Positions 46,876-58,253 of a stretch of DNA of 64,000 bases are shown one piece after another; within the stretch, counting starts at the first letter, position 1; every line of letters begins with the position of its first letter. The stretch spans positions 1 through 64,000 of the IMG/VR virus record IMGVR_UViG_3300010158_000027; one strand, given 5' to 3'. Under the pieces are notes generated by a model. The model worked only from the letters and a program-made list of their open reading frames with translations, searched no databases and was not told where the DNA came from. Position numbers and translations under genes: made by a program.

Positions 46876-47090
46876 CTATATCTAAAATTAAAAATGGGTT
46901 ATCATGGAATAATCAGGATAAATTTTTTACAACTAATTTTTATTCAGACGGTTACACCATTCCAGATATTATCCACATAGTATTGGAATTAAATCAAACA
47001 ATATATTGGTTTAATTGCCAAGAAATAACAATCGATGGATTAAGATTTAATGACCCAATAGAAGTTAGAAACTATTTATTTGTACCGTGA
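46863..47090 (+). CDS. Small hypothetical protein
   Basis: ORF coupled to its neighbours. Confidence 0.6.
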   Translation: MDILAISKIKNGLSWNNQDKFFTTNFYSDGYTIPDIIHIVLELNQTIYWFNCQEITIDGLRFNDPIEVRNYLFVP

Positions 47091-47695
47091 GATACTTTAA
47101 AAATATAAAAGACATATACCCAAAATACGATAAGTTTGGTGACTATTTTATTTTAACAAAAAAAATAGAAAGGGGTATTGGTAATGAAAATTTTGATTCG
47201 GAGTTTGAATTAAGTTATTCCGGATTAGTTGAAGACACAACTTACGAAACCAATAAAGAGTTCATCGCACTATTAAATAAAAACGGAGACTTGGTAATGT
47301 CGAATTCGAATTCAATGTTGAGACATTACAAACCATATTTAGATTCATCAAATGGTGAAGTTTTAATATCAGGATTAGGTTTAGGGTTATCACTATTACC
47401 CCTATTAGAGGATAGTGCCGTAACTAAAATCGACATTATAGAAATGGATATGGATATAATAGAATATGTTTACATTAATAGATTAAAAAAGTTAGACATT
47501 AATAATAAAATTAATATTATCAACCACGACATTTTTACATTCGAAACGACAAACACCTACGATTATATTTTATTAGATACGTGGTCGTCCCCAGATGAAA
47601 CATCAATATCGGAAGCGAACACATTAAAACTTAAGTTCACATCAAATTTAAAAAGTGGTGGATCAATTGATGTTCCTATTTTAGATTTTAATTAA
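47087..47695 (+). CDS. Class I SAM-dependent methyltransferase (spermidine-synthase-like fold)
   Basis: VLISGLGLG motif I, IDIIEMD, IINHDIF, YDYILLD. Confidence 0.75.
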   Translation: MRYFKNIKDIYPKYDKFGDYFILTKKIERGIGNENFDSEFELSYSGLVEDTTYETNKEFIALLNKNGDLVMSNSNSMLRHYKPYLDSSNGEVLISGLGLGLSLLPLLEDSAVTKIDIIEMDMDIIEYVYINRLKKLDINNKINIINHDIFTFETTNTYDYILLDTWSSPDETSISEANTLKLKFTSNLKSGGSIDVPILDFN

Positions 47696-47728
47696 TTACT
47701 TTTCATAAAAAACTAAATACATTTATTC

Positions 47729-50700
47729 ATGTTAAAAGATGAAAAGTGTTATGTTTATTACGCAACTGAAAAGTATTTTGAAATCGCAAAAAAATCCATT
47801 GAATCAATTCGTAAATATTCTGATTTACCCATATACCTTTATTTATTAAACTCCGATTTAAAGTTGGAGATTGATAATACGTTCACAATAAAATGGGAAT
47901 GTGATGTTGATTTTGATTCGGATATGTTCGAGTCGTTTGAAAACAAAAATTTCTACATTAATAGGAGAAATAAAAATATCTATAAAATTTTAATACAACG
48001 TCCATTAATTGTTAAACATTGTTTAGAGAATTATTCGAAGGTGGTTTGTTATGTTGACTCGGATTCCATATCCACCCCCTATGTTGATAATATATTTGAC
48101 TTTTATAACAAGGATTCAAACCACCCCTATTTTACTCAAGGAGTTTATGATTATTTAAATTTTTATGGTAGAGGTGGAATCCCAATCGATGAAAACAGTA
48201 CAAACACATTAGAGTACCCACTATGTGAGTTATTAAACACCAATCAAAAAAATAGAATCACATATAGACAAACGGGATATTTCGTTTCAAATGAAAAGTG
48301 CATTGATTTTTTAAATGAATGGTCGGAAGTCTGTAATCACCCGAAGGTTTTGGAGAACCCAGAACACTACGCTCCCTATCATGAAGAAACTGTTATGAAT
48401 GTACTTTTATGGAAATATAACTATCAGGATGGTTTACCCTATATGTATGTTAATGGTTCATTAGAAAGAGTGGATGAAATATATAATACCATTAAATTTA
48501 ATGGTGAGGATAATTTGGTATCCGAGTTATATAAAATACCAAAAAATAAAGAAACCTTATTATTTTTTCACGGAGAAAAAAGAGTGGAGGTTATGGAACA
48601 GATGATTCGGAGTATTGAAAAAAATTATAAAATGAAACTCCTATTTTTGGCTCCACATTTATCCACAGGTGGTATGCCGTCATTTCTTTTAAAAAGAATT
48701 CAGGAACTTATTAAATATAATAAAGACATTGAAATTTTTGTTATTGAATATTCATATTATGGTCCATCGTACGTTGTCCAAAGAAACCAAATTATAGATA
48801 TTATAGGGGATGATCATTTTTTTGAATTGGGTTCAAATAAAGATAGGGTAATTGATATAATAAAAGAAAACAATATTGATATTGTTCACATTGATGAAAA
48901 CGTTGAGATGTTAAATGAACCTATGTCAACAAATGTTTTAAACTTATTATATTCAGATGATCGAACATGGAGAATGGTGGAGACGTGTCATAATATTTGG
49001 TTTAATGCAAATCAAAATAAAATATATAACCCCGACTCTTATATATTTTGCACATCATGGCATGAGTCAAATACGTTTTCAGATTTACCCTCACCAAAAA
49101 CAACCATACAATTTCCTTTGGAGAATAAAAAACCAACATTGGATGACAGGTTGGAATCCAAAAGACAATTAAATTTTGAATCAGATAAAATCCATATAAT
49201 TAATGTTGGGCTTTGGACAAGTGGCAAAAACCAAAAAGAGGGTGTTGGGGTTGCAAAACTTTTATATGAGACAAATCCTGAAATAGTATTTCATTTCATT
49301 GGAAACCAAGCCCCCAATTTTAAAGACTATTGGGAACCCATAATGTGCGATATCCCACCAAACGTTAAGGTGTGGGGTGAAATGGATAATGTTGATTTAT
49401 TTATGCAATCTTCGGATATTTTAATGTTTAATTCAACATTAGAGTGTAATCCGCTAGTAGTTAGAGAGGCGATTTCACATGAATTAAAAATTATCACAAG
49501 AACATTACCCCAATACATGGGAATTTATGATAGGTACGTATACCCAATTGAATCCTCGAATGTTAATGAACTAAAAGATTTAATTTTAAAGGTAATTAAA
49601 TCTGAAAACAAATATAAAAATGTTATCGATGAGAATTATGAGTTTTCAAAAACTCACATCGACACATATAAACAAACATTACTTAATTCACCAATAAAAC
49701 AAAATAAAATGGAAAACAAAATTCAAATAGTGACTCATTTTGTCGAAGCCCCCTTTATTGAAATAAAAGGTCAGAGTTCGGCAGACTATAAAATTAAGGT
49801 ATATAATGAAAACGATAGTTGTATTTACGAGAATACCATAAAGGTTAACCATTGGGTAAAATTAAATAGGGGATACTACACAAAATGGCGAACTGAAATA
49901 TATGAAGATAATGAATTAATCTATAATGAAACTATAAACTTAAAAGATAAAAGGGTTTATGTATCTTTTGAAAGTAAATCATTGGGGGACACACTCTCTT
50001 GGATTCCGTATGTGGAGGAATTTAGAAAAAAACACGAATGTAAAGTTATTGTCTCCACGTTTTTAAATAATATACTCGAAAACCAATACCCAGAAATTGA
50101 GTTTGTTAACCCCAACTCGGAGGTTCACAATTTACATGCACTCTATAGAATAGGTTGGTTTTATAAACCCGACGGTAATTTTGATTCAAATAGACACCCA
50201 TATGATCCGAAATCACAACCACTTCAAAAAACCGCATCAGACATTTTAGGTTTAGAATTTAAAGAAATAAAACCAAACATAAAATACCCAAGACTTTCAA
50301 AAAAGAAAAAGGTGGGAATTGGTTTACACGGAACTGCGCAATCAAAATATTGGAACAATCCTGATGGATGGCAAGAGGTGGTGAATTACCTTACCGGAAA
50401 GGGATATGAGGTGGTTTTATACTCTAAAGAGGAAAACGGTTACATGGGGAATAAACATCCGTATGGTGTCACTAAATTTAAGGAAGGATCATTAAATAAT
50501 TTAATTTATGATATGTCAACTTGTGAGTTTTTCATAGGTATTGGGTCGGGACTTAGTTGGCTCGCTTGGTCGATAGATTTGCCCATCGTTTTAATATCGG
50601 GGTTTAGTGAAAAATGGACGGAGACTCAATCTAATACGTATCGAGTTTTAAATGATAACGTTTGTCATGGGTGTTTTAATATGTGTAGATTAAACCCTTC

Positions 50701-50815
50701 AGATTGGAATTGGTGTCCAATGTTAAAAGATACGGATAGAATGTTTGAATGCACAAAATCAATCACATCTAAAATGGTAATTAATCAAATCGATCAACTA
50801 ATAATATCGCAATAA
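47729..50815 (+). CDS. Three-domain glycosyltransferase: GT-A (DxD), GT-B (GT4-like) and a TibC/Aah-like heptosyltransferase domain
   Basis: YVDSDS; FLAPHLSTGG (from 48632); from about 49709 SLGD, KYWNN, SGLSWLAW, ISGFS and the Cys cluster CHGC..WCP..FECT. Confidence 0.85.
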   Translation: MLKDEKCYVYYATEKYFEIAKKSIESIRKYSDLPIYLYLLNSDLKLEIDNTFTIKWECDVDFDSDMFESFENKNFYINRRNKNIYKILIQRPLIVKHCLENYSKVVCYVDSDSISTPYVDNIFDFYNKDSNHPYFTQGVYDYLNFYGRGGIPIDENSTNTLEYPLCELLNTNQKNRITYRQTGYFVSNEKCIDFLNEWSEVCNHPKVLENPEHYAPYHEETVMNVLLWKYNYQDGLPYMYVNGSLERVDEIYNTIKFNGEDNLVSELYKIPKNKETLLFFHGEKRVEVMEQMIRSIEKNYKMKLLFLAPHLSTGGMPSFLLKRIQELIKYNKDIEIFVIEYSYYGPSYVVQRNQIIDIIGDDHFFELGSNKDRVIDIIKENNIDIVHIDENVEMLNEPMSTNVLNLLYSDDRTWRMVETCHNIWFNANQNKIYNPDSYIFCTSWHESNTFSDLPSPKTTIQFPLENKKPTLDDRLESKRQLNFESDKIHIINVGLWTSGKNQKEGVGVAKLLYETNPEIVFHFIGNQAPNFKDYWEPIMCDIPPNVKVWGEMDNVDLFMQSSDILMFNSTLECNPLVVREAISHELKIITRTLPQYMGIYDRYVYPIESSNVNELKDLILKVIKSENKYKNVIDENYEFSKTHIDTYKQTLLNSPIKQNKMENKIQIVTHFVEAPFIEIKGQSSADYKIKVYNENDSCIYENTIKVNHWVKLNRGYYTKWRTEIYEDNELIYNETINLKDKRVYVSFESKSLGDTLSWIPYVEEFRKKHECKVIVSTFLNNILENQYPEIEFVNPNSEVHNLHALYRIGWFYKPDGNFDSNRHPYDPKSQPLQKTASDILGLEFKEIKPNIKYPRLSKKKKVGIGLHGTAQSKYWNNPDGWQEVVNYLTGKGYEVVLYSKEENGYMGNKHPYGVTKFKEGSLNNLIYDMSTCEFFIGIGSGLSWLAWSIDLPIVLISGFSEKWTETQSNTYRVLNDNVCHGCFNMCRLNPSDWNWCPMLKDTDRMFECTKSITSKMVINQIDQLIISQ

Positions 50816-50848: not shown

Positions 50849-51379
50849 TTAATTGTTAGACATTATTTTACAAAATTCTAACATCTGGTTATGGGTTAAA
50901 TTATTTTTAGCGTGATTACAAGTGATACTAATAAATTGAATATTACCTTTAACATAACCTTTATCACTATCAATCCGATCTAAAGATGCGGTGTTTAAAT
51001 TAGTCCTATCACCATTATGGTTGGGGTGTAATAATTGTATATGACTATAAACACAGATACCATTTTGCTTATTCCATTGATCTAAAATATCGTCCAAAGT
51101 TACACCTATCTCGTGTTTTCTTTTTTTTAGTCTACGGTAATGTTCTCTTAATCCTGTGTAGTTGTCCTTTCTATTATTAGACATACCCAATAAGAATTTT
51201 ACATTCCCTTCAACATATTTAAGTAAATGTTTATTATTTATTTTACCACTACACGTTAATGAACAATAGTTTTTTCTACCAATCTTTTCATTTCGATTAA
51301 TCTCTGATTTGTCCTTAAGAAATGTTATATTACATTCAGGGTTGGAGCAAATTGTTAGTTCTTTTTTTCTTTTTTCCAT
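50849..51379 (-). CDS. Free-standing HNH-like (His-Me finger) endonuclease
   Basis: N-terminal CxxxxC...CSLTC zinc finger; CVYS...ASLDRIDSDKGYVKGNIQFISITCNHAKN. Confidence 0.75.
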   Translation of the reverse strand: MEKRKKELTICSNPECNITFLKDKSEINRNEKIGRKNYCSLTCSGKINNKHLLKYVEGNVKFLLGMSNNRKDNYTGLREHYRRLKKRKHEIGVTLDDILDQWNKQNGICVYSHIQLLHPNHNGDRTNLNTASLDRIDSDKGYVKGNIQFISITCNHAKNNLTHNQMLEFCKIMSNN

Positions 51380-51480
51380 AATCCTTTTATTATAAATATA
51401 TACATCTCCACAAAAAACCCATCTCCACAAAAAAATACATAAAAAAATTACCACTATTTCTAATGGTAAATCTTTTGTCT

Positions 51481-51520
51481 TCTAGCGATGTTTATAGTTT
51501 TACTTATAAACACCGCTAGA
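51481..51520 (-). terminator. Hairpin 3' of the tmRNA gene
   Basis: TCTAGCG-A-TGTTTATA...TATAAACA-C-CGCTAGA inverted repeat. Confidence 0.6.
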
Positions 51521-51539
51521 AGGTACAAAAGATCCAGGG

Positions 51540-52156
51540 TGGAGGTGCGGGGACTCGCAAAATCAATAATTTTCATTACTGCGTGGACTATATCATCATC
51601 TCATTGAGATGTCGGACGCTCTAGCTGGTTATTAAGTATATCGCTATACTCCAGTAGTCTCTGCACCTTCTTACTCTGTAAGCTTGGCTCAGGATTGCCA
51701 CCACCATTACGTGCTGAGGTTTCCCTGAGTTCATCCGATTTTTAATCTATTGTCACCAATAGATGGGTCCGACATTAAACCCCGGTCCATAACATCCTGT
51801 AAAACAAGGACTACACGTTTAGGTTAACGTTTTCTAACGTTCCAAAATATTTGATTTTTCACACCGACCAACAAACGGTGATAGTCCTTTCGGGGGACCA
51901 TACCCGTTTTGTTTTCTTTTAGAGTGTAAACTAACTCATCAACGACTTCTGTTGCTAGGTTGAATGTCTGACCGACCCCCGTTTCCGAACTTAAATTAAG
52001 CTACAGTAACTTCAGATTCTCTTACTAAACCAAGAGTTTCCATTTTCGATAATACGTCGCCGATTGTTTTTTGTGAATCAGTTTTTAAAGAGATTAACTC
52101 AGTCTCTACGTGCCCTTTATTCTCAGCCGACATCTGTCAAATCCAAAAACACCCCC
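51540..52156 (-). ncRNA. ssrA: tmRNA, intron-containing (exon 1 52156-51778, exon 2 51557-51540; CCA not encoded)
   Basis: 5' GGGGGTG..GGATTTGAC; 3' CACCTCCA with G3-U; T-arm CGGGG-TT|CGAGT-CCCCG restored on splicing; tag ORF 52061-51996. Confidence 0.92.
51558..51777 (-). mobile_element. ORF-less group I intron (IC3-like, 220 nt) in the tmRNA T-loop
   Basis: P1 GGGUU/GACCC with U-G at the 5' splice site; P3 UCGGAUG/CGUCCGA; P4 CUCAGG/CCUGAG; P7 GACUA/UAGUC; P9 GAAA hairpin; terminal G. Confidence 0.9.
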
Positions 52157-52175
52157 ATAAATCAAAGAACTTTAA

Positions 52176-52183
52176 CAAAGATA
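52176..52183 (-). promoter_or_regulatory. Bacteroidota-type -7 promoter element TAnnTTTG (representative of 8 sites)
   Basis: Also minus 53-60, 4220-4227, 17486-17493, 54446-54453, 59558-59565; plus 7025-7032, 9332-9339. Confidence 0.7.
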
Positions 52184-52221
52184 ATACAACAATTCCGATT
52201 ATCCAATATATTTATATAAAT

Positions 52222-53406
52222 ATGTTTAAAAAAAGGTTTATATACGAACAAGAGGAAGAGGAAGTCGAATTAAATGACTTTCAAAAAATCCTAGCACTTC
52301 ATAAAAAAAGAATGCATCCAAATCAGGTTGAGTTTTTTAATTCGGAAGGTAAGGATTTTTCAGATATTATATCAATCAATTACGATGGGATTACCTTCAA
52401 TTTTAATGATTTACAGGAATATTTAGAGTTCTTTTTTCCAGAAATATATGGTGTGGATGGTTCCGATGGGGCCTACGAGGCTGAGTACTTCCAACAGATG
52501 TATAATGGAAATTGGAGCTGGCATAACGAATATTGGGATAGATCTACTGATGATTGGAATGAGGGGTATATTGTTGGAGCAATGAAAAGTCAAAGTTTAG
52601 AGACATTAAAAGAAATTATAGATGCGGTTTCGCCTGGTGATAGTAAATGTATTGTCTTTAAAGATGGGGAGTATGTATTGGATAACTCTAGCGATAAGTC
52701 TAACGCCGAAACAACCATTACGTCAATTTTAGAAGGTTTGGGGGTTGAGGATAAGATAAAGGAAGCATATGTTGATGCTCAAGTGGACGCTGTGAGTGAT
52801 GAAGTCTCTAAATATATTGAAGACACCTATGGTGATTGTTTTTCTGAACTTGGAATTGAAAACGATTCGGCAAGACACTTTTTTTGGAAATATTCAATGG
52901 ATTGGGGTTCTATGGTTTTATTGTTTGCTCGTTTTGGTACTGAAAACGATAGTTTTTTAGACTTACTTTTTGAAGCGATTAACGCCACAGCGATTAAACA
53001 TCTTCCAGAATATTATGAAATGCAATATAACGTTTGGAATGAAGAAAAGTTCACTAAAACATATGTCAATGAACTAAGTACCATTTTTGATAAACTATTA
53101 ATTGAGGTATCTGAAAACCACAATAAAGGGTATTATGAAGCTATTTCAAAGATTACAAAAATCGGTGGGTTTAATACCTGGATAACCTCTAAAAATGAAA
53201 AAGTTAAACTTATGATTAGAAATCTTGATCCCGAAACCCTAAAAGTTGATTTTTCTGTTATCAATGGTAATTATGGTTCTTGGCATTCAAAAAAAGGTAG
53301 ATCTACCGTTGATGAAATAATCAACCTACTCTATAATGAAAGTATGTTTGATGTTGAGGATTTCAGGGAACATTATTTAAGATTTATTCAAAAGACGATT
53401 CTTTAA
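52222..53406 (+). CDS. Acidic hypothetical protein with short leader (MFKKRFIYEQ)
   Basis: ORF; TATTTAT at 52209-52215. Confidence 0.8.
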   Translation: MFKKRFIYEQEEEEVELNDFQKILALHKKRMHPNQVEFFNSEGKDFSDIISINYDGITFNFNDLQEYLEFFFPEIYGVDGSDGAYEAEYFQQMYNGNWSWHNEYWDRSTDDWNEGYIVGAMKSQSLETLKEIIDAVSPGDSKCIVFKDGEYVLDNSSDKSNAETTITSILEGLGVEDKIKEAYVDAQVDAVSDEVSKYIEDTYGDCFSELGIENDSARHFFWKYSMDWGSMVLLFARFGTENDSFLDLLFEAINATAIKHLPEYYEMQYNVWNEEKFTKTYVNELSTIFDKLLIEVSENHNKGYYEAISKITKIGGFNTWITSKNEKVKLMIRNLDPETLKVDFSVINGNYGSWHSKKGRSTVDEIINLLYNESMFDVEDFREHYLRFIQKTIL

Positions 53407-54429
53407 TATATCATAAAGGTAGGGTAAGTCGTCGTCAGAAATAAAAACGGTGCCACCCCCAAAAATATCTGAAATCGTAACTCCACTTTTTTCTTCCATA
53501 ACATCGATTGTTTCTAATTGGTGGAATTCCTCCGATTCAATATAGAAATCATCATCGTCAAATCCAATTAAAGAATTCATAACCGTTTGTTGTGTATATA
53601 CTATGGGTTTATAAACATATTCGTATTTTTTATAACCAAGAACCTTTACCATGTTTTTTCCAGCATCGATTGAGTTTTTAACATCATCAATTGAGATGAA
53701 CTCTTGGTTTGAGTGCATATTATAGTAACCACAAGACATGTTGATACAAGAAACGTCCGATTTCTTTTTTAGTTGCGATATGTCAGTATATGGGTGAGAT
53801 TGAACTAACATTTCATTTCCAAAAGATTCCTCAATCACCTTTAATGTTTTTGTGAAAAATTCACTATCACGATCAAACAATCGAACTCCCGAACATATCT
53901 CGGATATTAAATGGTTCCCTGGCGCATCGTATTGGGCGATGTAACCAACATCCTTTAAAAAATTCTCATCACATTTTGACGATCCGTGACAACCCGTCTC
54001 TTCTGAAACAAAAAGTCCAATTTTTACCTTATCTAATTGTTTTAAAAGTTCCAAACAAATAAAAATACCACATTTATCATCACCACCAATACCCGTTGGG
54101 TTTCCGTCTTCATCGTAAGCTTTCAAACAATCAACCTCACTTTTATCGAAAGTTTTTCCGAACGTATTTGGTCGAGGTAGTTTTTCTTCTTTAACTATAA
54201 TTTTATCAATCATGTTATGAACCGTATCGGTGTGGGCAATAAACATCGGGTAAGACTCATTCTCAGTAAGTGTACCTTTAGTTGCGTATACATTCATCAT
54301 AATATCCCTGTAATATGAGACACCCTCAATCTTGTCCAATTCAGAGCAAATATATTCCACCATATCCTCCTCTTGGTATGTTTTTGATGGTACTGATAAT
54401 AAATCTTTGAATTTCTCTAAATCGAACAT
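53377..54429 (-). CDS. Dinuclear zinc peptidase (M20/M28/M42 clan)
   Basis: AHTDTVH, GGDDKCG, SEETG, YD, NMHSNQE; TATCTTTG at 54446-54453. Confidence 0.85.
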   Translation of the reverse strand: MFDLEKFKDLLSVPSKTYQEEDMVEYICSELDKIEGVSYYRDIMMNVYATKGTLTENESYPMFIAHTDTVHNMIDKIIVKEEKLPRPNTFGKTFDKSEVDCLKAYDEDGNPTGIGGDDKCGIFICLELLKQLDKVKIGLFVSEETGCHGSSKCDENFLKDVGYIAQYDAPGNHLISEICSGVRLFDRDSEFFTKTLKVIEESFGNEMLVQSHPYTDISQLKKKSDVSCINMSCGYYNMHSNQEFISIDDVKNSIDAGKNMVKVLGYKKYEYVYKPIVYTQQTVMNSLIGFDDDDFYIESEEFHQLETIDVMEEKSGVTISDIFGGGTVFISDDDLPYLYDILKNRLLNKS

Positions 54430-54522
54430 AGTATACGTTTTTCAACAAAGATAATAAACTTTTTGGGTTATTGGTATATTTTTTATAAAATAAAAATCCC
54501 CACCTTTTGAGTGGGGATTGTA

Positions 54523-56745
54523 TCATGGTTTAAGTCTTCTTTTTGTTGGTTTTTTTATCTTTACCTCCGTTTTCTTATCCGTCTCATTATATGAGAGAAT
54601 AAATTTGGATCCCTTTTCTGGGTTATTTGTTAATATGGATTCGGTTATCGCATCATCAACCCACTTTTGTACTGTACGTTTTAATATACGAGCCCCAAAT
54701 CTAGTGTCTGTCCCTACGGTAATTAAATGTTTTTTTAATGTGTCGTCCACCTCAACATCGAACTCAATATTTTTAACTCTCTCAAAAACCTTATTAAGTT
54801 CTAATTCTACGATTTTTAATAAATCATCCTCATTCAAATCTTTAAAATAGATAATCTCATCAAATCTATTAATGAATTCTGGTGCGAACCTTTTAAACAA
54901 TTCCTTTTCAAGTAGAGATTTTACCTCATCGTCTTTCTTTTCGATTTTAGTTGTCGTTGTGAATCCAACTCCCCCACCAAAATCTTGAATAACTTTGGTT
55001 CCAACATTGGATGTCATTAAAATTATACAATTTTTAAAATTGATTTTTCTCCCATGCCCATCCGTTAGATATCCTTCATCTAACATTTGTAAAAATACGT
55101 TAAAAATTTCAGGGTGAGCCTTTTCTATCTCGTCTAAAAGTATTACCGAATATGGGTTATTTTTAATTTTGTTTAAAAATGGTGATCCATCTTCATACCC
55201 AACATACCCTGGTGATGTTCCCGTAAGTTTTGATGTTGACACTTTATCTGAGAATTCACTCATGTCTAATCTAATTAACGAATCTTCGCTATTAAACATA
55301 TGTTTAGCTAATTGTTTGGCTAACTCCGTTTTACCGACACCAGAATTACCAATAAGTAACCCACTAAATATTGGTCGTTTAGGGTCGTTTAGTCCTATCT
55401 TGTTTCTTTGAATTGATCTTGCAATTTTAGCAACCGCATCATCCTGACCAATAACTTTACTACATAAAGTTTCTTTTAATACTCTTAACTGTTCAGTCTC
55501 ATCCGTATTGATTTTACTAATTGGAATTTTTGTCATCAACGAAACAACATCATAAACTACATCTTCAGTGACTTCACGTTTGTTTAAGTTTCTATTTTTT
55601 TCAAACTCCTCTTTTTCTCTCTGTAAATCTAATAGGATTTTTCTTTCCTTATCTCTAAGGTTGGCTGCCTCCTCATATTTTTGGCTATTAATTACTTTTA
55701 TTTTTTCCTCTTTAATATCCTGAGCTAACTTTTTAAGATCCTCAATTATTTCAGGTAATTTAATTTCTACTTGTGATCTCGCCCCAACCTCATCGATTAT
55801 ATCAAATGCCTTATCTGGAAATTCTCTATCAGTGATATATCTATCAGCCAACTCAACACAAAGTTTTAATATTTCGTCGGTGTATCTTACTTTGTGGTGT
55901 TCCTCATACCTATCTTTGGAATTTTGAAGGATTTGTAATGTTTCTTCTTTAGTTGATGGATCCACCATGACTTTTTGGAATCTTCTTTCAAGAGCTCCGT
56001 CCTTTTCAATATTTTTTCTATATTCCTCTAAGGTAGTTGCCCCAATACATTGTAGTTCCCCACGAGATAATGCGGGTTTAAATATATTAGACGCGTCCAT
56101 CGAACCAGATGAATTACCCGCACCTATCATCGTATGTATTTCATCAATAAAAATAATAATATCGGGATTGGCATATAATTCCTCAATTATCACTTTCATC
56201 CTTTCCTCGAATTGTCCTCTATATTTTGTTCCCGCAACTATTGATGTCATGTCTAAAGACACTATCCTTTTGCCGGTTAAGTTTTGGGGACAATCACCCT
56301 CAAATATTTTTTTAGCCAACCCCTCGACTATAGCTGTTTTACCACAATTATGGGATACTACCCCATTGGATATATATTTCCTTTCGTTATCTAAAACCTC
56401 CAAATCGTAGGTGTTGTGAACCCCAATTTCAGATTTTTCAATAACCTCATAAATATTATTGTCCTCACAATATACAAAATCCCCCACGTTAATGGTTTTT
56501 AATTTAACCCAAAACGAATCATTAATATACTCAACAGTTTCGTTGGTTGTATTGACATCAACTTCAACTAAATGATCTTCAGACCCAGACAACCCTAACC
56601 CGTTTGAAAGTTTTATTTCAAAACAGTTTTTATTTTGTTTTTTATATAAATTACCGATTAATTTATATCCAGATGGCGTTTTAACTTTATACGTCCCACC
56701 CTCACTCTCGATTAAATTAAAAAACTCCTCAATTTTGATCTTCAT
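54523..56745 (-). CDS. clpC: IntC (133 aa, 56745-56347) fused to the C-terminal part of a ClpC-like AAA+ unfoldase
   Basis: SEDH, TYDLEV, SHN|CGKT; then IFIDE, UVR-like YEEAANLRDKE, GNSGVGKT, LLDEIEKAH and a VGF loop. Confidence 0.92.
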   Translation of the reverse strand: MKIKIEEFFNLIESEGGTYKVKTPSGYKLIGNLYKKQNKNCFEIKLSNGLGLSGSEDHLVEVDVNTTNETVEYINDSFWVKLKTINVGDFVYCEDNNIYEVIEKSEIGVHNTYDLEVLDNERKYISNGVVSHNCGKTAIVEGLAKKIFEGDCPQNLTGKRIVSLDMTSIVAGTKYRGQFEERMKVIIEELYANPDIIIFIDEIHTMIGAGNSSGSMDASNIFKPALSRGELQCIGATTLEEYRKNIEKDGALERRFQKVMVDPSTKEETLQILQNSKDRYEEHHKVRYTDEILKLCVELADRYITDREFPDKAFDIIDEVGARSQVEIKLPEIIEDLKKLAQDIKEEKIKVINSQKYEEAANLRDKERKILLDLQREKEEFEKNRNLNKREVTEDVVYDVVSLMTKIPISKINTDETEQLRVLKETLCSKVIGQDDAVAKIARSIQRNKIGLNDPKRPIFSGLLIGNSGVGKTELAKQLAKHMFNSEDSLIRLDMSEFSDKVSTSKLTGTSPGYVGYEDGSPFLNKIKNNPYSVILLDEIEKAHPEIFNVFLQMLDEGYLTDGHGRKINFKNCIILMTSNVGTKVIQDFGGGVGFTTTTKIEKKDDEVKSLLEKELFKRFAPEFINRFDEIIYFKDLNEDDLLKIVELELNKVFERVKNIEFDVEVDDTLKKHLITVGTDTRFGARILKRTVQKWVDDAITESILTNNPEKGSKFILSYNETDKKTEVKIKKPTKRRLKP

Positions 56746-57914
56746 AATAACTTTTTATTTTTACAATTAGTTTATTTTCATTTAAATCATATATTAAATT
56801 AATATTATTATCTACACAAAATTTAATTTTATAATCCATTTTTTCTTTATATCCTCCCAAAACCCGATCCAATTTATCCATATTTTTACCATTTAATAAC
56901 CCAAAAAACTCAATGTAAATATCTTCTTTAGGTAAGTAAAAATCACATTTCATATTACTATTGGGGTAGTTAGTCTCATAAACAAAATTTAAGTTATTTT
57001 TTTCTAAAAATAAAGCCACCCGATACTCACCCACACTTTTATATCTTATACCGTTATGGTAAGTTGGTATTCCATAATATTGTCTATTTTGGTTTAAGTT
57101 AATTTTACTATAAATAGTATTTTTTAATTCTTTACTTGTTGATTGATAAAAATTCTGTATTATTTTACTACTAATATACGGGGATAAATCCGAATATCTT
57201 TTAATGTCATCTTTAGATAATACACAATCAATAAAATCATTAATATTTTTATTTGTGGTACAATGTGTAACAATATTATTAATTTTTTCTTTAAACCCAG
57301 AATGCTTTAAAATGTCTGATTGACTTTTTTCATTATATTTAAACCCACTTTTACTTCTTTGTATTTCGGAATAATTCGATTTGTTTTTTAAACTCTCAAT
57401 CCACTTATTTTGCCTTTCGTCAAACACTACCCTCCCTTTATCCTTACCGTACTTTTCTATACATTTTTCCAAACTAAATGTGCTCTGCCTTTGTTTAATT
57501 TGGTTTTTAGACTCCTCAATAGAATACCCCTTTTTAATCCAATACTCAACGTTGGTTGTTGTCTTATCTTTATAATGTTCTGGATTATCTTTTTTTAAAT
57601 CGGATAATTTTTTACTGTTTTGTTTTTGTTTTTTAACAATAAAATTTTTAATGTCTTCATCCCCCCCAACCCATACACTTTAAAAATTTTTTATCATATA
57701 TAGTATCGGGGTATTTTAAAATGGATTTAATTGTGGGTTTAACTTGTTTGTAATTTACAAAATCCGTTTTTTCGATAAAATCTTGAATTTCTTTTTTATG
57801 CGAAACATCAAACTTTATAAAGTACTTATAAAATCCACCATTAACTATAAAGTTTTCAAAATCTTCTATAGTTAAAACCTCAAATATCGGTTTACTTCTT
57901 TTTTTAATTAACAT
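56729..57914 (-). pseudogene. Homing-endonuclease-like gene (PD-(D/E)XK/Vsr-like), frameshifted at a G7 run (57661-57667)
   Basis: The 85-aa ORF joins a frame that stays open to 56729 if one G is removed (394 aa); KSVGEYRV...CDFYLPKEDIYIEFFG. Confidence 0.7.
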
Positions 57915-57959
57915 AACACTATACAGGATGTGGGAAATACCACACCCTGACTATAAATA

Positions 57960-58253
57960 TCACATAGTTTCAATATTGTGAGTATTCACATCTGAAATTT
58001 TTTCTACCTCAATCCAAGTATCCCCTAAAACACATCCAGGTTCCCCTAAGATGATTGGGTTATTTTTTTTTCTTCTCGAAAGTATTTGGGCGATTCTATT
58101 AATCTCATCTTCTCTACCGACAACTGGGTCTAATTTACCTTCTTCTGCTAATTTTATTAAATCTCTTGAAAAATTATCTAACACAGGTGTTTTCGTTGAT
58201 CCTTCTTGGTTTTTATTTTTTGATTTGTCACTTCCGTCTGCAGATTCGATCAT
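57960..58253 (-). CDS. clpC: N-terminal ClpC extein (73 aa) plus IntN (24 aa, 58034-57963)
   Basis: [10 protein letters not shown]...[11 protein letters not shown]...[14 protein letters not shown]|[10 protein letters not shown]...stop. Confidence 0.92.

What the first reader, a model, noticed from the sequence alone, without database searches (positions are those of the whole stretch)
51558..51777. Self-splicing group I intron inside the T-loop of a phage tmRNA
Seen: the T-arm is split CGGGGTT | 220 nt | CGAGTCCCCG. The insert has the full core (P1 with U-G, P3, P4, P7 GACUA/UAGUC, P9 with GAAA, terminal G) and GAAACCU/GGCAAUCCUGAGCCAA/GGUGCAGAGACU strings like the IC3 tRNA-Leu introns. Known: tmRNA T-loop introns have been reported but are rare, and standard tmRNA finders would miss this gene. 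Inference: tmRNA activity depends on splicing.
Basis: partly seen in the sequence, partly recalled or inferred. Interest (0 to 1): 0.7.

Follow-up and report, generated by a model that had tools for sequence, protein, structure and literature searches.

The report
Group I intron in phage tmRNA
A 281-kb freshwater phage carries its own ribosome-rescue RNA (tmRNA) gene, and a 220-base self-splicing-type intron interrupts its T-loop; the intron has clearly been moving between the tmRNA genes of related phages, next to a nuclease gene that probably drives the movement.

Summary
A tmRNA gene runs 52156->51538. Its T-arm is split CGGGGUU | 220 nt (51777->51558) | CGAGUCCCCG by a complete group I intron (Rfam 92.7 bits, E 1.6e-22). 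Splicing was not seen directly, but comparison fixes the junction. About 80 related viral contigs carry the same tmRNA without the intron, and some have exactly the predicted ligated T-arm. A profile of 64 intronless relatives aligns end to end only after the 220 nt are removed. The T-stem halves covary across the intron.

The site (after loop nucleotide 2) matches the rare 'position 3' of intron-form tmRNAs, known from 9 Bacteroidota genomes. I found a bacterial Bacteroidia tmRNA with a 70%-identical intron at the same site.

New here:
- The host gene belongs to a phage-specific tmRNA family.
- Intron copies are 92-100% identical in exons that are 60-87% identical.
- Short co-conversion tracts flank the insertion site.
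- A free-standing HNH-type endonuclease cassette sits right after the 3' exon in most bearers, which fits collaborative homing.

This is a new member of a known kind, with moderate interest. Side findings include relatives with A in place of the terminal G, a fractured clp gene with a split intein, and a conserved tmRNA-peptidase-Clp module.

The parts
52176..52206 (-). Promoter-like element upstream of the tmRNA: TTG (52206-52204), 20 nt, TATCTTTG (52183-52176). It resembles the Bacteroidota TTG / TAnnTTTG promoter type. The motif ends 20 nt before mature position +1, which implies a short leader removed by RNase P.
   Evidence: Read directly from the sequence. Similar TAnnTTTG boxes lie upstream of diverged tmRNAs in L230, L084 and L234. 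The consensus itself is recalled from the literature and was not tested. The sigma-70 scan found nothing convincing.
51778..52156 (-). tmRNA 5' exon (379 nt). It holds the acceptor 5' strand GGGGGUG (G3 pairs with U, the alanine identity pair), the tag reading frame, the pseudoknot region, and the 5' strand of the T-stem plus the first two loop bases (CGGGG-UU).
   Evidence: RF00023 alignment. 73-90% identity to about 90 viral-contig tmRNAs, with alignments ending exactly at 51778. Intronless relatives score 96-101 bits on RF00023.
51996..52061 (-). Tag reading frame: resume codon GGC, 21 codons giving GDVLSKMETLGLVRESEVTVA, then stop TAA (51998-51996).
   Evidence: Read directly from the sequence. 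ARAGORN calls the same frame in intronless relatives, for example GNVLNKMETLGLLRESEVTVA. The tag is conserved across the family.
51558..51777 (-). Group I intron, 220 nt, with no ORF. Helices in window coordinates: guide sequence GGACCC 51770-51765 (P1 with exon GGGUU; U51778 pairs with G51769); UCG 51772-51770 (possible P10 with 3' exon CGA); P2 51764-51757 / 51752-51745 with GUGA loop; P3 51738-51732 / 51618-51612; P4 51729-51723 / 51694-51688; P5 about 51719-51698; P6/P6a 51687-51666; P7 GACUA 51659-51655 / UAGUC 51590-51586; extra hairpin (P7.1-like, GCGA loop) 51654-51625; P8 51611-51597; P9 with GAAA loop 51581-51564; terminal G 51558.
   Evidence: Rfam 92.7 bits. RNAalifold on 13 related introns recovers P2, P3, P4, P5, P6, the extra hairpin, P8 and P9, with compensatory changes in 31 of 52 pairs. 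The minimum-free-energy z-score is -3.4. P1, P7 and P10 were read by eye; P7 never varies.
51538..51557 (-). tmRNA 3' exon (20 nt): the rest of the T-loop CGAGU, T-stem 3' strand CCCCG, acceptor 3' strand CACCUCC, discriminator A, then CC. The next base is C, so the final A of CCA is not encoded.
   Evidence: Read directly from the sequence. Intronless L004, L036 and L111 carry the identical contiguous T-arm and acceptor sequence. 26 of 87 family members lack an encoded CCA.
51441..51534 (-). 3' trailer: a long, nearly perfect hairpin (51534-51468), followed by a short hairpin with a U-run (51469-51441). This is probably a processing and termination region.
   Evidence: Read directly from the sequence. 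The spurious microRNA-model hits reflect the hairpin. The same type of hairpin follows the tmRNAs that lack CCA in L010, L012, L020, L029, L050, L054 and L061.
50849..51379 (-). Free-standing HNH / endonuclease VII-like (His-Me finger) endonuclease gene, 176 aa, on the same strand, 159 nt after the tmRNA 3' end. It is the candidate driver of intron homing.
   Evidence: PHROG 3322 'endonuclease' E 1.8e-19, PHROG 1035 'endonuclease VII' E 1.1e-14, PHROG 3118 'HNH endonuclease' E 3.3e-12. The nearest named Atlas clusters are HNH or EndoVII (a lead only). Among loci with enough downstream DNA it is present in 7 of 8 intron-bearers and 3 of 64 intronless loci. Against closest kin it is a separate insertion of about 635 nt right after the tmRNA. 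Pfam, NCBIfam and PDB sequence searches were empty.
51403..51430 (-). Two direct copies of TTGTGGAGATG between the tmRNA terminator and the HNH start. They are possibly a promoter or regulatory motif of the HNH cassette.
   Evidence: 2 exact copies here, and 1 elsewhere in the window with one mismatch. The same motif lies upstream of the HNH gene in L059, L013, L107, L025 and L233, and in reverse orientation after some intronless tmRNAs.

Best explanation
The window belongs to a 281-kb tailed phage from fresh water. The phage encodes its own tmRNA. The gene is transcribed on the minus strand as a precursor of about 0.7 kb.

A 220-nt group I ribozyme sits between the second and third base of the 7-base T-loop. 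It would remove itself by the standard two-step route. First, an external guanosine attacks after U51778, which forms the U.G pair of P1 with the internal guide GGACCC. Second, the freed 5' exon attacks after the terminal G51558. The exons are then joined to give ...CGGGG-UUCGAGU-CCCCG-CACCUCC-ACC.

Only then can the T-arm and acceptor stem take their normal shape. RNase P trims the 5' end. The 3' end is trimmed and completed to CCA by host enzymes. The roughly 400-nt tmRNA is charged with alanine (G3.U pair) and works with the host's SmpB. It would add the tag (A)GDVLSKMETLGLVRESEVTVA to proteins on stalled ribosomes.

At the DNA level the intron is a mobile element. It has recently entered many different alleles of this phage tmRNA family by recombination at the T-loop site. 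The most likely aid is the HNH endonuclease gene inserted just after the 3' exon (collaborative, or trans, homing).

Shown: the anatomy, the junction by comparison, the mobility signatures and the association with the HNH gene.
Inferred: splicing itself, tmRNA function in infection, and the endonuclease's target.
For: Identity of the intron:
- Rfam Intron_gpI matches the full model at 92.7 bits, E 1.6e-22.
- 31 of 52 predicted pairs show compensatory changes across 13 relatives.
- The U.G pair in P1, the terminal G and a 3-bp P10 were read directly.

Identity of the host gene:
- RF00023 gives E 1.8e-16 on the unspliced gene.
- Intronless relatives score 96-101 bits, while intron-bearers score 45-56 bits.
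- The acceptor stem is fully paired in 87 of 87 family members, and 8 covarying T-stem types occur among those 87.

Junction:
- Relatives' alignments stop exactly at 51778.
- L004, L036 and L111 have the predicted ligated sequence as a contiguous stretch.
- An nhmmer profile of 64 intronless relatives aligns to the in-silico spliced RNA in one piece (model 1-411, 368 bits). It aligns to the unspliced RNA in two pieces that abut in the model and lie 220 nt apart in the sequence.
- The T-stem halves covary across the intron: CGGGG/CCCCG, GAGGG/CCCTC, GTGGG/CCCAC, ATGGG/CCCAT and ACGGG/CCCGT.

Same site in bacteria:
- A Bacteroidia tmRNA (L220) has a 70%-identical intron at GAGGGUU|...G|CGAUC.
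- This matches 'position 3' in PMC11915505.

Phage origin:
- The source is a virus record, 96% complete, with a terminase gene at 63328-64101.
- The tmRNA lies beside the same M42 peptidase and Clp ATPase genes in 67-81 viral loci.
- No bacterial homologue was found in 92 pattern hits or in 401 Bacteroidia genomes.

Mobility:
- Introns are 92-100% identical while their exons are 60-87% identical; L013 and L063 have identical introns in exons that are 86% identical.
- Bearers are scattered on the exon tree, each next to intronless kin.
- The 40 nt around the insertion site resemble other bearers more than they resemble kin that are otherwise nearly identical.
- Flanks are collinear, with the intron and an HNH cassette as the only differences.

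HNH gene.
Against: - No spliced RNA was observed. Eight RNA libraries gave no joint at 51778/51557 and held only relatives' contigs, some of them unspliced intron-exon pieces. These were assembled contigs and may include DNA, so this is weak evidence either way.
- ARAGORN does not call the gene even after in-silico splicing. It also misses 75% of the intronless relatives.
- The phage has no SmpB gene and does not encode the final A of CCA, so function depends on the host.
- Nearly half of the related intron copies carry A instead of the terminal G. This lineage therefore tolerates, or contains, copies that may not splice.
- The HNH proteins are only 56-84% identical between loci whose introns are 92-100% identical.
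- Four intron-bearers lack the HNH gene (L020, L230, L231, L084). The two elements are therefore not an obligate unit.
Confidence: 0.85

Rival explanations
1. The intron is real but no longer splices in this phage. The tmRNA gene would then be an inactivated relic carried along by a selfish insertion.
For: There is no RNA evidence of splicing. Many related copies have A at the terminal position, which in studied group I introns blocks exon ligation (the mechanism is summarised in PMC3984707). The insertions are recent relative to exon divergence, so exon conservation does not prove function after invasion.
Against: This copy keeps every element needed: the U.G pair in P1, P10, all core helices, an invariant P7 and the terminal G. 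Differences among copies are compensatory in P2 (L075, L020). The tag frame, acceptor and T-stem are intact.
Confidence: 0.08
2. The unspliced or partly processed RNA is the working product, for example a decoy that blocks the host's trans-translation. A CDS-less tmRNA-like RNA of mycobacteriophage DS6A is reported to inhibit endogenous tmRNA when expressed in E. coli.
For: PMC11915505 mentions the DS6A precedent. Unspliced intron-exon contigs of relatives occur in RNA libraries. Copies with A at the terminal position are common.
Against: Most family members have no intron and look like ordinary full tmRNAs with a conserved tag frame. The intron is an add-on to a working design, not part of it.
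Confidence: 0.05
3. The gene is a bacterial host tmRNA at the edge of a prophage or in a chimeric assembly, not a phage gene.
For: tmRNA genes are common prophage integration sites (PMC11915505). Some of the viral contigs with the 5' pattern have it at a contig end.
Against: The gene lies 52 kb inside a 281-kb virus record, with phage genes on both sides and a terminase gene 12 kb away. It lies beside the same phage Clp and M42 genes in dozens of contigs, including ones of 150-300 kb. No homologue was found in bacterial genomes searched. Several DNA runs hold 96-100% of the stretch's words, though those runs may be the window's own source samples.
Confidence: 0.02

Closest known systems
Intron-form tmRNA genes (group I intron in the T-loop), especially the 'position 3' group of class Bacteroidia (PMC11915505)
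   Same: The gene architecture is the same: a tmRNA split in the T-loop, U at -1 paired with G in P1, a terminal G, and a restored 7-base loop. The subsite is the same (after loop base 2). The intron is homologous to that of a bacterial Bacteroidia tmRNA: 70% identity, the same extra hairpin after P7, and GNRA loops on P2 and P9.
   Different: The host gene is phage-encoded and belongs to a tmRNA family not found in the bacterial genomes searched. The paper's table lists only 9 position-3 instances, all bacterial. Here there are at least 15 viral and 32 metagenome contigs; the two sets overlap, and one metagenome contig is probably the window's own source. The reported homing endonuclease genes are LAGLIDADG-type and lie inside the intron (23 of 844). 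Here the intron has no ORF, and an HNH-type gene lies outside it.
Bacterial tRNA group I introns (IC3 type; tRNA-Leu(UAA), tRNA(CAU))
   Same: The P4-P6 and J6/7-P7 sequences are shared, as are the P2 and P9 tetraloop layout and the small ORF-less size. The Bacteroidia tRNA(CAU) introns L221 and L222 even share the extra hairpin.
   Different: This intron is inserted in a T-loop, not an anticodon loop. The tRNA-Leu(UAA) intron (L224) lacks the 30-nt hairpin between P7 and P3'. I did not formally assign a subgroup.
Collaborative (trans) homing of ORF-less phage introns by free-standing endonucleases (reviewed in PMC3984707; T4 mobE and I-TevIII, PMC2790892)
   Same: An ORF-less intron sits beside a free-standing HNH-family endonuclease gene, about 180 nt from the intron insertion site. 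The intron copies are nearly identical in diverged alleles. Co-conversion tracts flank the site.
   Different: The target would be a non-coding RNA gene. Cleavage and its site are untested. Some bearers lack the endonuclease, and three loci have it without the intron. Those three all carry the variant T-stem GAGCG/CGCTC.
Phage-encoded tmRNAs (for example mycobacteriophage entries in the tmRNA database)
   Same: A virus carries a tmRNA-like gene and relies on host SmpB.
   Different: This one is full-length, with a conserved 21-codon tag. It belongs to a large freshwater phage family, lies next to Clp-like ATPase and M42 peptidase genes, and is interrupted by an intron.

Membership tests
Group I intron (Rfam RF00028) | Covariance-model score above the curated threshold over the whole model | tested here: met
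   92.7 bits against a gathering score of 50, model positions 1-253, E 1.6e-22.
Group I intron (Rfam RF00028) | Conserved core helices P3-P9 supported by covariation | tested here: met
   RNAalifold on 13 relatives recovers P2, P3, P4, P5, P6, P8 and P9, with compensatory changes in 31 of 52 pairs. P7 GACUA/UAGUC never varies, so it says nothing either way.
Group I intron (Rfam RF00028) | U at -1 in a U.G pair within P1, and G as the last intron base | tested here: met
   Exon GGGUU pairs with guide GACCC, with U51778 opposite G51769. The last base, G51558, precedes CGAGU. No other choice of boundaries restores a 7-base T-loop.
Group I intron (Rfam RF00028) | Guanosine-dependent self-splicing | not testable with these tools
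   RNA libraries gave no joints. An in vitro assay is needed.
tmRNA (Rfam RF00023) | tRNA-like domain: 7-bp acceptor stem with a G3.U pair, a T-arm with a UUCGA-type loop, and an ACCA end | tested here: met
   After removal of the 220 nt: GGGGGUG/CACCUCC with G3.U, and CGGGG-UUCGAGU-CCCCG. The sequence is identical to that of intronless L004, L036 and L111. The end is ACC followed by C, so the last A must be added.
tmRNA (Rfam RF00023) | Covariance-model score above threshold | tested here: inconclusive
   The unspliced gene scores 45.1 bits against a gathering score of 47, E 1.8e-16. The tool cannot take the spliced sequence. Intronless relatives score 96-101 bits, and the family profile aligns end to end with the spliced form.
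tmRNA (Rfam RF00023) | Internal tag reading frame with a resume codon and a stop | tested here: met
   GGC...TAA at 52061-51996. The peptide is conserved across the family and called by ARAGORN in relatives. The ending TVA is less typical than LAA.
tmRNA (Rfam RF00023) | Works with SmpB in trans-translation | not testable with these tools
   No SmpB gene in the phage genome. The host protein would be needed.
Intron-form tmRNA, T-loop position 3 (PMC11915505) | Intron between loop bases 2 and 3 | tested here: met
   UU|CGAGU. The mapping of the paper's numbering is my reading of its figure legend. It is supported by the Bacteroidia example L220, which has the intron at UU|CGAUC.
Intron-form tmRNA, T-loop position 3 (PMC11915505) | Bacterial (class Bacteroidia) host genome | tested here: not met
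   The genome is a virus record with a terminase gene, and no bacterial homologue of the exons was found. This is a feature of distribution, not of mechanism.
HNH / His-Me finger homing endonuclease (for the 176-aa neighbour) | Sequence membership in the family | tested here: met
   PHROG families annotated as endonuclease, endonuclease VII and HNH endonuclease, E 1.8e-19 to 3.3e-12. Pfam, NCBIfam and PDB sequence searches were empty. The AlphaFold model was too poor to use (pLDDT 51).
HNH / His-Me finger homing endonuclease (for the 176-aa neighbour) | Cuts intronless alleles at or near the intron insertion site | not testable with these tools
   Only indirect support: co-occurrence, an insertion right after the tmRNA, and co-conversion tracts.

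The most novel reading that the evidence does not exclude
Freshwater jumbo phages, not bacteria, may be the main reservoir and vehicle of the rare 'position 3' tmRNA intron. The ORF-less intron and the neighbouring free-standing HNH endonuclease would act together as a homing unit. That unit would cut intronless tmRNA alleles of co-infecting phages (a form of competition between phages) and occasionally reach Bacteroidia host tmRNA or tRNA genes. A sister lineage of the intron with A instead of the terminal G is found in about 45% of copies. It either splices by a rule not seen in studied group I introns, or spreads while disabling its host gene.
Probability: 0.35. Interest if true: 0.7.

Novelty: new member of a known kind. 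Interest (0 to 1): 0.5.

Why it matters
Introns in tmRNA T-loops have been catalogued only in bacteria. The subsite used here was known from nine genomes.

Finding it in a large family of phage-encoded tmRNAs, with clear marks of recent homing and a neighbouring endonuclease cassette, has three consequences:
- It suggests a route by which such introns could move between genomes.
- It provides a natural set of intron-plus and intron-minus alleles for testing homing into a non-coding RNA gene.
- It shows that annotation pipelines miss these phage tmRNAs. ARAGORN found none in the window and only a quarter of the intronless relatives.

The phage tmRNA lies next to a Clp-type unfoldase and a peptidase in dozens of phages. 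That hints that these phages bring their own tagging and protein-handling module. The variants with A at the terminal position offer ribozyme researchers a simple test: does a natural group I intron splice without its terminal G?

Tried and rejected
- ARAGORN on the window, on the unspliced gene and on the in-silico spliced gene found nothing. I do not take this as evidence against a tmRNA, because it also misses 69 of 92 relatives.
- RNA evidence: two searches for sequencing runs and two read-laying runs on eight RNA libraries gave no joint at the splice sites. The libraries hold relatives, not this phage. They are assembled contigs, and a spliced allele looks the same as an intronless one, so the result is uninformative.
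- The genome-contig scan with the tmRNA 5' pattern gave 92 loci in MAGs of many phyla. All were chance 21-mers with no homology beyond 25 nt.
- BLAST of the window's 5' exon and of L230's 5' exon against 401 Bacteroidia genomes gave only 26-34-nt marginal hits or none. The host therefore cannot be named from the tmRNA.
- A Bacteroidota host is suggested only by the intron's relatives, a promoter-like TAnnTTTG motif, and Clp similarity to uncultured huge phages.
- The structure prediction of the HNH protein gave pLDDT 51, so I ran no fold search on it.
- I did not run the count of structure pairs or build a covariance model. Both would have needed a long hand-typed structure line, and the RNAalifold counts served instead.
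- I considered alternative splice boundaries (after the first or third U, or at G51564, which the Rfam model aligns as the last base). I rejected them because they give loops of 5, 8 or 13 bases. The stretch between P9 and CGA also varies in length (6-10 nt) among copies, so it is intronic.
- A search of the held literature found no report of an intron in a phage tmRNA. This is not proof that none exists.
Full report
WHAT IS THERE

The feature lies on the minus strand. A tmRNA gene starts at 52156 (GGGGGUGUUUUUGGAUUUGAC...). Its T-arm is interrupted after CGGGG-UU at 51778. There follow 220 nt (51777->51558), then CGAGU-CCCCG-CACCUCC-ACC (51557->51538).

Rfam's group I intron model matches the insert over its full length at 92.7 bits, E 1.6e-22. 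It is the only such match in the window and in the whole genome. Rfam's tmRNA model matches 52156->51761 with E 1.8e-16. It stays 2 bits under its gathering score, because the 3' strands of the T-stem and acceptor stem are 220 nt away. ARAGORN reports nothing.

THE GENOME

The window is the first 64 kb of a 281,269-bp virus record, estimated 96% complete. Its G+C content is 32.9%, and it comes from freshwater metagenomes. A large-terminase domain lies at 63328-64101. The genome has no SmpB gene and only three tRNA genes by ARAGORN.

THE INTRON'S ANATOMY

By direct reading:
- Exon GGGUU pairs with the guide GACCC, with U51778 opposite G51769 (P1).
- UCG just upstream of the guide can pair with the first three bases of the 3' exon (P10).
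- P2 is an 8-bp stem with a GUGA loop.
- P3, P4, P5 and P6 follow.
- P7 is GACUA/UAGUC.
- A 30-nt extra hairpin with a GCGA loop sits between P7 and the 3' strand of P3.
- P8 follows, then P9 with a GAAA loop, a 6-nt tail and the terminal G.

There is no ORF.

I aligned thirteen related introns: seven phage tmRNA copies, one bacterial tmRNA, three from Bacteroidia genomes (two of them in tRNA genes) and two from cultured phages. RNAalifold recovered P2, P3, P4, P5, P6, the extra hairpin, P8 and P9. Compensatory changes occur in 31 of 52 pairs. P7 forms a pseudoknot with P3 and never varies, so it could not be tested. The single-sequence fold is more stable than all 200 shuffles (z = -3.4).

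THE JUNCTION, FIXED BY COMPARISON

BLAST showed that most carry a homologous tmRNA (73-90% identity). Their alignments end exactly at the last base of the 5' exon.

In about 80 of them the T-loop is uninterrupted. L004, L036 and L111 have precisely the sequence expected from joining the window's exons. These intronless genes score 96-101 bits on Rfam's tmRNA model, against 45-56 bits for intron-bearers.

A sequence profile built from 64 distinct intronless relatives aligns to the in-silico spliced RNA in one piece (model 1-411, 368 bits). It aligns to the unspliced RNA in two pieces that abut in the model and lie 220 nt apart in the sequence.

The two halves of the T-stem covary across the intron: CGGGG/CCCCG, GAGGG/CCCTC, GTGGG/CCCAC, ATGGG/CCCAT and ACGGG/CCCGT. 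All intron-bearers have GGG before the UU, as pairing with the guide requires. The commonest intronless T-stem (CGGAG) would mismatch. No other choice of boundaries restores a 7-base loop.

THE tmRNA

The acceptor stem GGGGGUG/CACCUCC has the G3.U pair and is fully paired in 87 of 87 family members. The tag frame runs from GGC at 52061 to TAA at 51996 and encodes GDVLSKMETLGLVRESEVTVA. ARAGORN predicts the same frame in the quarter of intronless relatives that it detects, and the peptide is conserved.

The gene ends ACC followed by C, so the last A of CCA must be added. 26 of 87 relatives also lack an encoded CCA.

Upstream lies TTG, 20 nt, then TATCTTTG. This resembles the Bacteroidota promoter type as I recall it, and similar boxes precede diverged relatives. 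This is a lead, not a test.

PLACE AMONG KNOWN INTRON-FORM tmRNAs

[quoted passage not shown] Position 7 dominates (1658 instances). Position 3 has 9 instances, all Bacteroidota, out of 459,935 genomes. The window's intron follows loop base 2, which I read as position 3.

I searched 401 Bacteroidia genomes with the intron and found six relatives. One, L220, is a bacterial tmRNA (76 bits) with the intron at GAGGGUU|...G|CGAUC. That is the same site, with 70% identity and the same extra hairpin. Two others sit in the anticodon loops of tRNA(CAU) genes, and one in tRNA-Leu(UAA).

In cultured phages the nearest introns split large-terminase genes of Vibrio phages, and one lies unannotated in a tRNA cluster of Klebsiella phage Muenster.

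The host tmRNA does not look bacterial: 92 bacterial loci with the same 5' 21-mer are unrelated beyond 25 nt. 401 Bacteroidia genomes gave only 26-34-nt marginal hits to the exon.

MOBILITY

A scan for the exon-intron junction found 13 viral and 32 metagenome contigs; the two sets overlap, and one metagenome contig is probably the window's own source. The bearers include several distinct tmRNA lineages.
- Among eight complete viral copies the introns are 92-100% identical while their exons are 60-87% identical. L013 and L063 have identical introns in exons that are 86% identical.
- On a tree of 74 distinct exon sequences, the bearers are scattered, each beside intronless kin.
- Bearers are about 100% identical to their intronless kin along the gene body. 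In the 40-nt window around the insertion site, however, they match other bearers better (100% against 87-97% for L013; similar for L063, L107, L025 and the window). This is the pattern left by co-conversion during homing.
- Locus-to-locus BLAST shows collinear flanks at 89-97% identity. The only differences are the intron and a cassette of about 635 nt that starts right after the tmRNA.

THE NEIGHBOURING ENDONUCLEASE

That cassette encodes a 172-182-aa protein (176 aa in the window, 51379->50849). It matches PHROG families annotated as endonuclease, endonuclease VII and HNH endonuclease (E 1.8e-19 to 3.3e-12). The nearest named Atlas clusters are also HNH or EndoVII (a lead only). Pfam, NCBIfam and PDB sequence searches found nothing, and the structure model was too poor to use.

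Among loci with at least 700 nt downstream, the gene is present in 7 of 8 intron-bearers and 3 of 64 intronless loci (Fisher p = 6e-7, not corrected for relatedness). The three exceptions share a T-stem, GAGCG/CGCTC, seen only in four loci of one small clade; the fourth, L099, has too little downstream DNA to tell. That would fit a target-site variant that protects a genome from its own enzyme.

This arrangement is the one described as collaborative or trans homing: an ORF-less intron plus a free-standing endonuclease that targets the intron insertion site (PMC3984707; PMC2790892).

Caveats:
- The proteins are only 56-84% identical between loci with near-identical introns.
- Four bearers lack the gene (L020, L230, L231, L084).
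- Cleavage is untested.

WHAT IS NOT SHOWN

Splicing is not shown. Eight RNA libraries gave no joint at the predicted sites. They hold only relatives' contigs, including unspliced intron-exon pieces. This neither supports nor refutes splicing. Whether the phage tmRNA functions in infection, and in which host, is unknown.

VERDICT

It is a new member of a known kind: an intron-form tmRNA at the rare position 3. The added points are that the gene is phage-encoded, that the intron is demonstrably mobile within a phage tmRNA family, and that a free-standing HNH endonuclease gene sits beside it. I put the chance that the intron splices at the stated junction at about 0.85.

Noticed in passing
L020, L075, L084, L109 (viral contigs); L236, L239, L241, L242, L246, L250-L252, L255, L256, L259, L261, L264 (metagenome contigs): Many related copies of this intron end ...AUUUA|CGA, with A where the universally conserved terminal G should be. 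This holds for 4 of 15 viral copies and 13 of 29 readable metagenome copies. P7 is unchanged, no nearby G would restore a normal T-loop, and the copies sit in at least five tmRNA backgrounds (T-stems GAGGG, ATGGG, ACGGG). Most have no HNH neighbour. Either they do not complete splicing, or they break the terminal-G rule.
   Followed up: partly
window 54523-58253 (- strand): The ClpA/B-type ATPase gene is fractured at its first P-loop. ORF 57960-58253 ends ...GEPG|[10 protein letters not shown]... (N-extein plus an intein N-piece of about 24 aa). Two ORFs follow (57657-57914, 85 aa; 56729-57472, 247 aa). ORF 54523-56745 then starts with an intein C-piece of about 133 aa ending ...VVSHN|CGKT. 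More than 50 relatives have the gene uninterrupted; only L118 shares the split arrangement, including both inserted ORFs. It looks like a split intein with intervening genes. Pfam support for the intein is faint.
   Followed up: partly
window 51538-56745 and 56-81 related loci: The gene order is conserved: tmRNA, a 394-aa protein of unknown family (52222-53406, +), an M42-family peptidase (53377-54429, -), and a two-domain Clp-type AAA+ ATPase. The order is kept even next to the most diverged tmRNA types. The phage may carry a tagging and protein-handling module. The tag ends TVA rather than LAA.
   Followed up: partly
L077, L059, L032, L075, L054, L030 (1-2 kb from the tmRNA); own genome G000:228753-229157: GOLLD RNA (RF02032, 277-325 bits) lies close to the tmRNA in related phages. 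It is present in this phage's genome outside the window. tRNA arrays and a 'freshwater-1' RNA also occur in these loci.
   Followed up: partly
window 51468-51534 (- strand): A long hairpin of about 67 nt, nearly perfect, directly follows the tmRNA 3' end. The same kind of hairpin follows exactly those relatives that lack an encoded CCA (L010, L012, L020, L029, L050, L054, L061). It may be a 3' processing signal. It caused spurious microRNA-model hits.
   Followed up: no
window 51403-51413 and 51420-51430 (- strand); L059, L013, L107, L025, L233: The motif TTGTGGAGATG is repeated in tandem upstream of the HNH gene and conserved there in relatives. Its reverse complement follows some intronless tmRNAs. 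Its function is unknown.
   Followed up: no
L228 (Klebsiella phage Muenster, MT708547.1 about 302896-303086); L226, L227 (Vibrio phages): A related group I intron lies unannotated between tRNA-Ser and tRNA-Asn genes in a 347-kb Klebsiella phage. It possibly splits an unannotated tRNA, and an HNH endonuclease gene lies just downstream. In Vibrio phages the related intron splits the large terminase gene.
   Followed up: no
L032, L100, L103 (and L099): These intronless tmRNA alleles have the HNH gene downstream, and all carry the otherwise unseen T-stem GAGCG/CGCTC. It may be a cleavage-resistant variant of the target site.
   Followed up: no
window 47087-50815 (+ strand): Downstream of the HNH gene lie a spermidine-synthase-like methyltransferase-fold protein (202 aa) and a 1028-aa protein with two glycosyltransferase domains (GT1 and GT9 types). 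Among the viral loci first compared, the glycosyltransferase matched only the window's own genome; one metagenome locus, L240, has a 61%-identical match. Gene order is not conserved on this side of the tmRNA.
   Followed up: no
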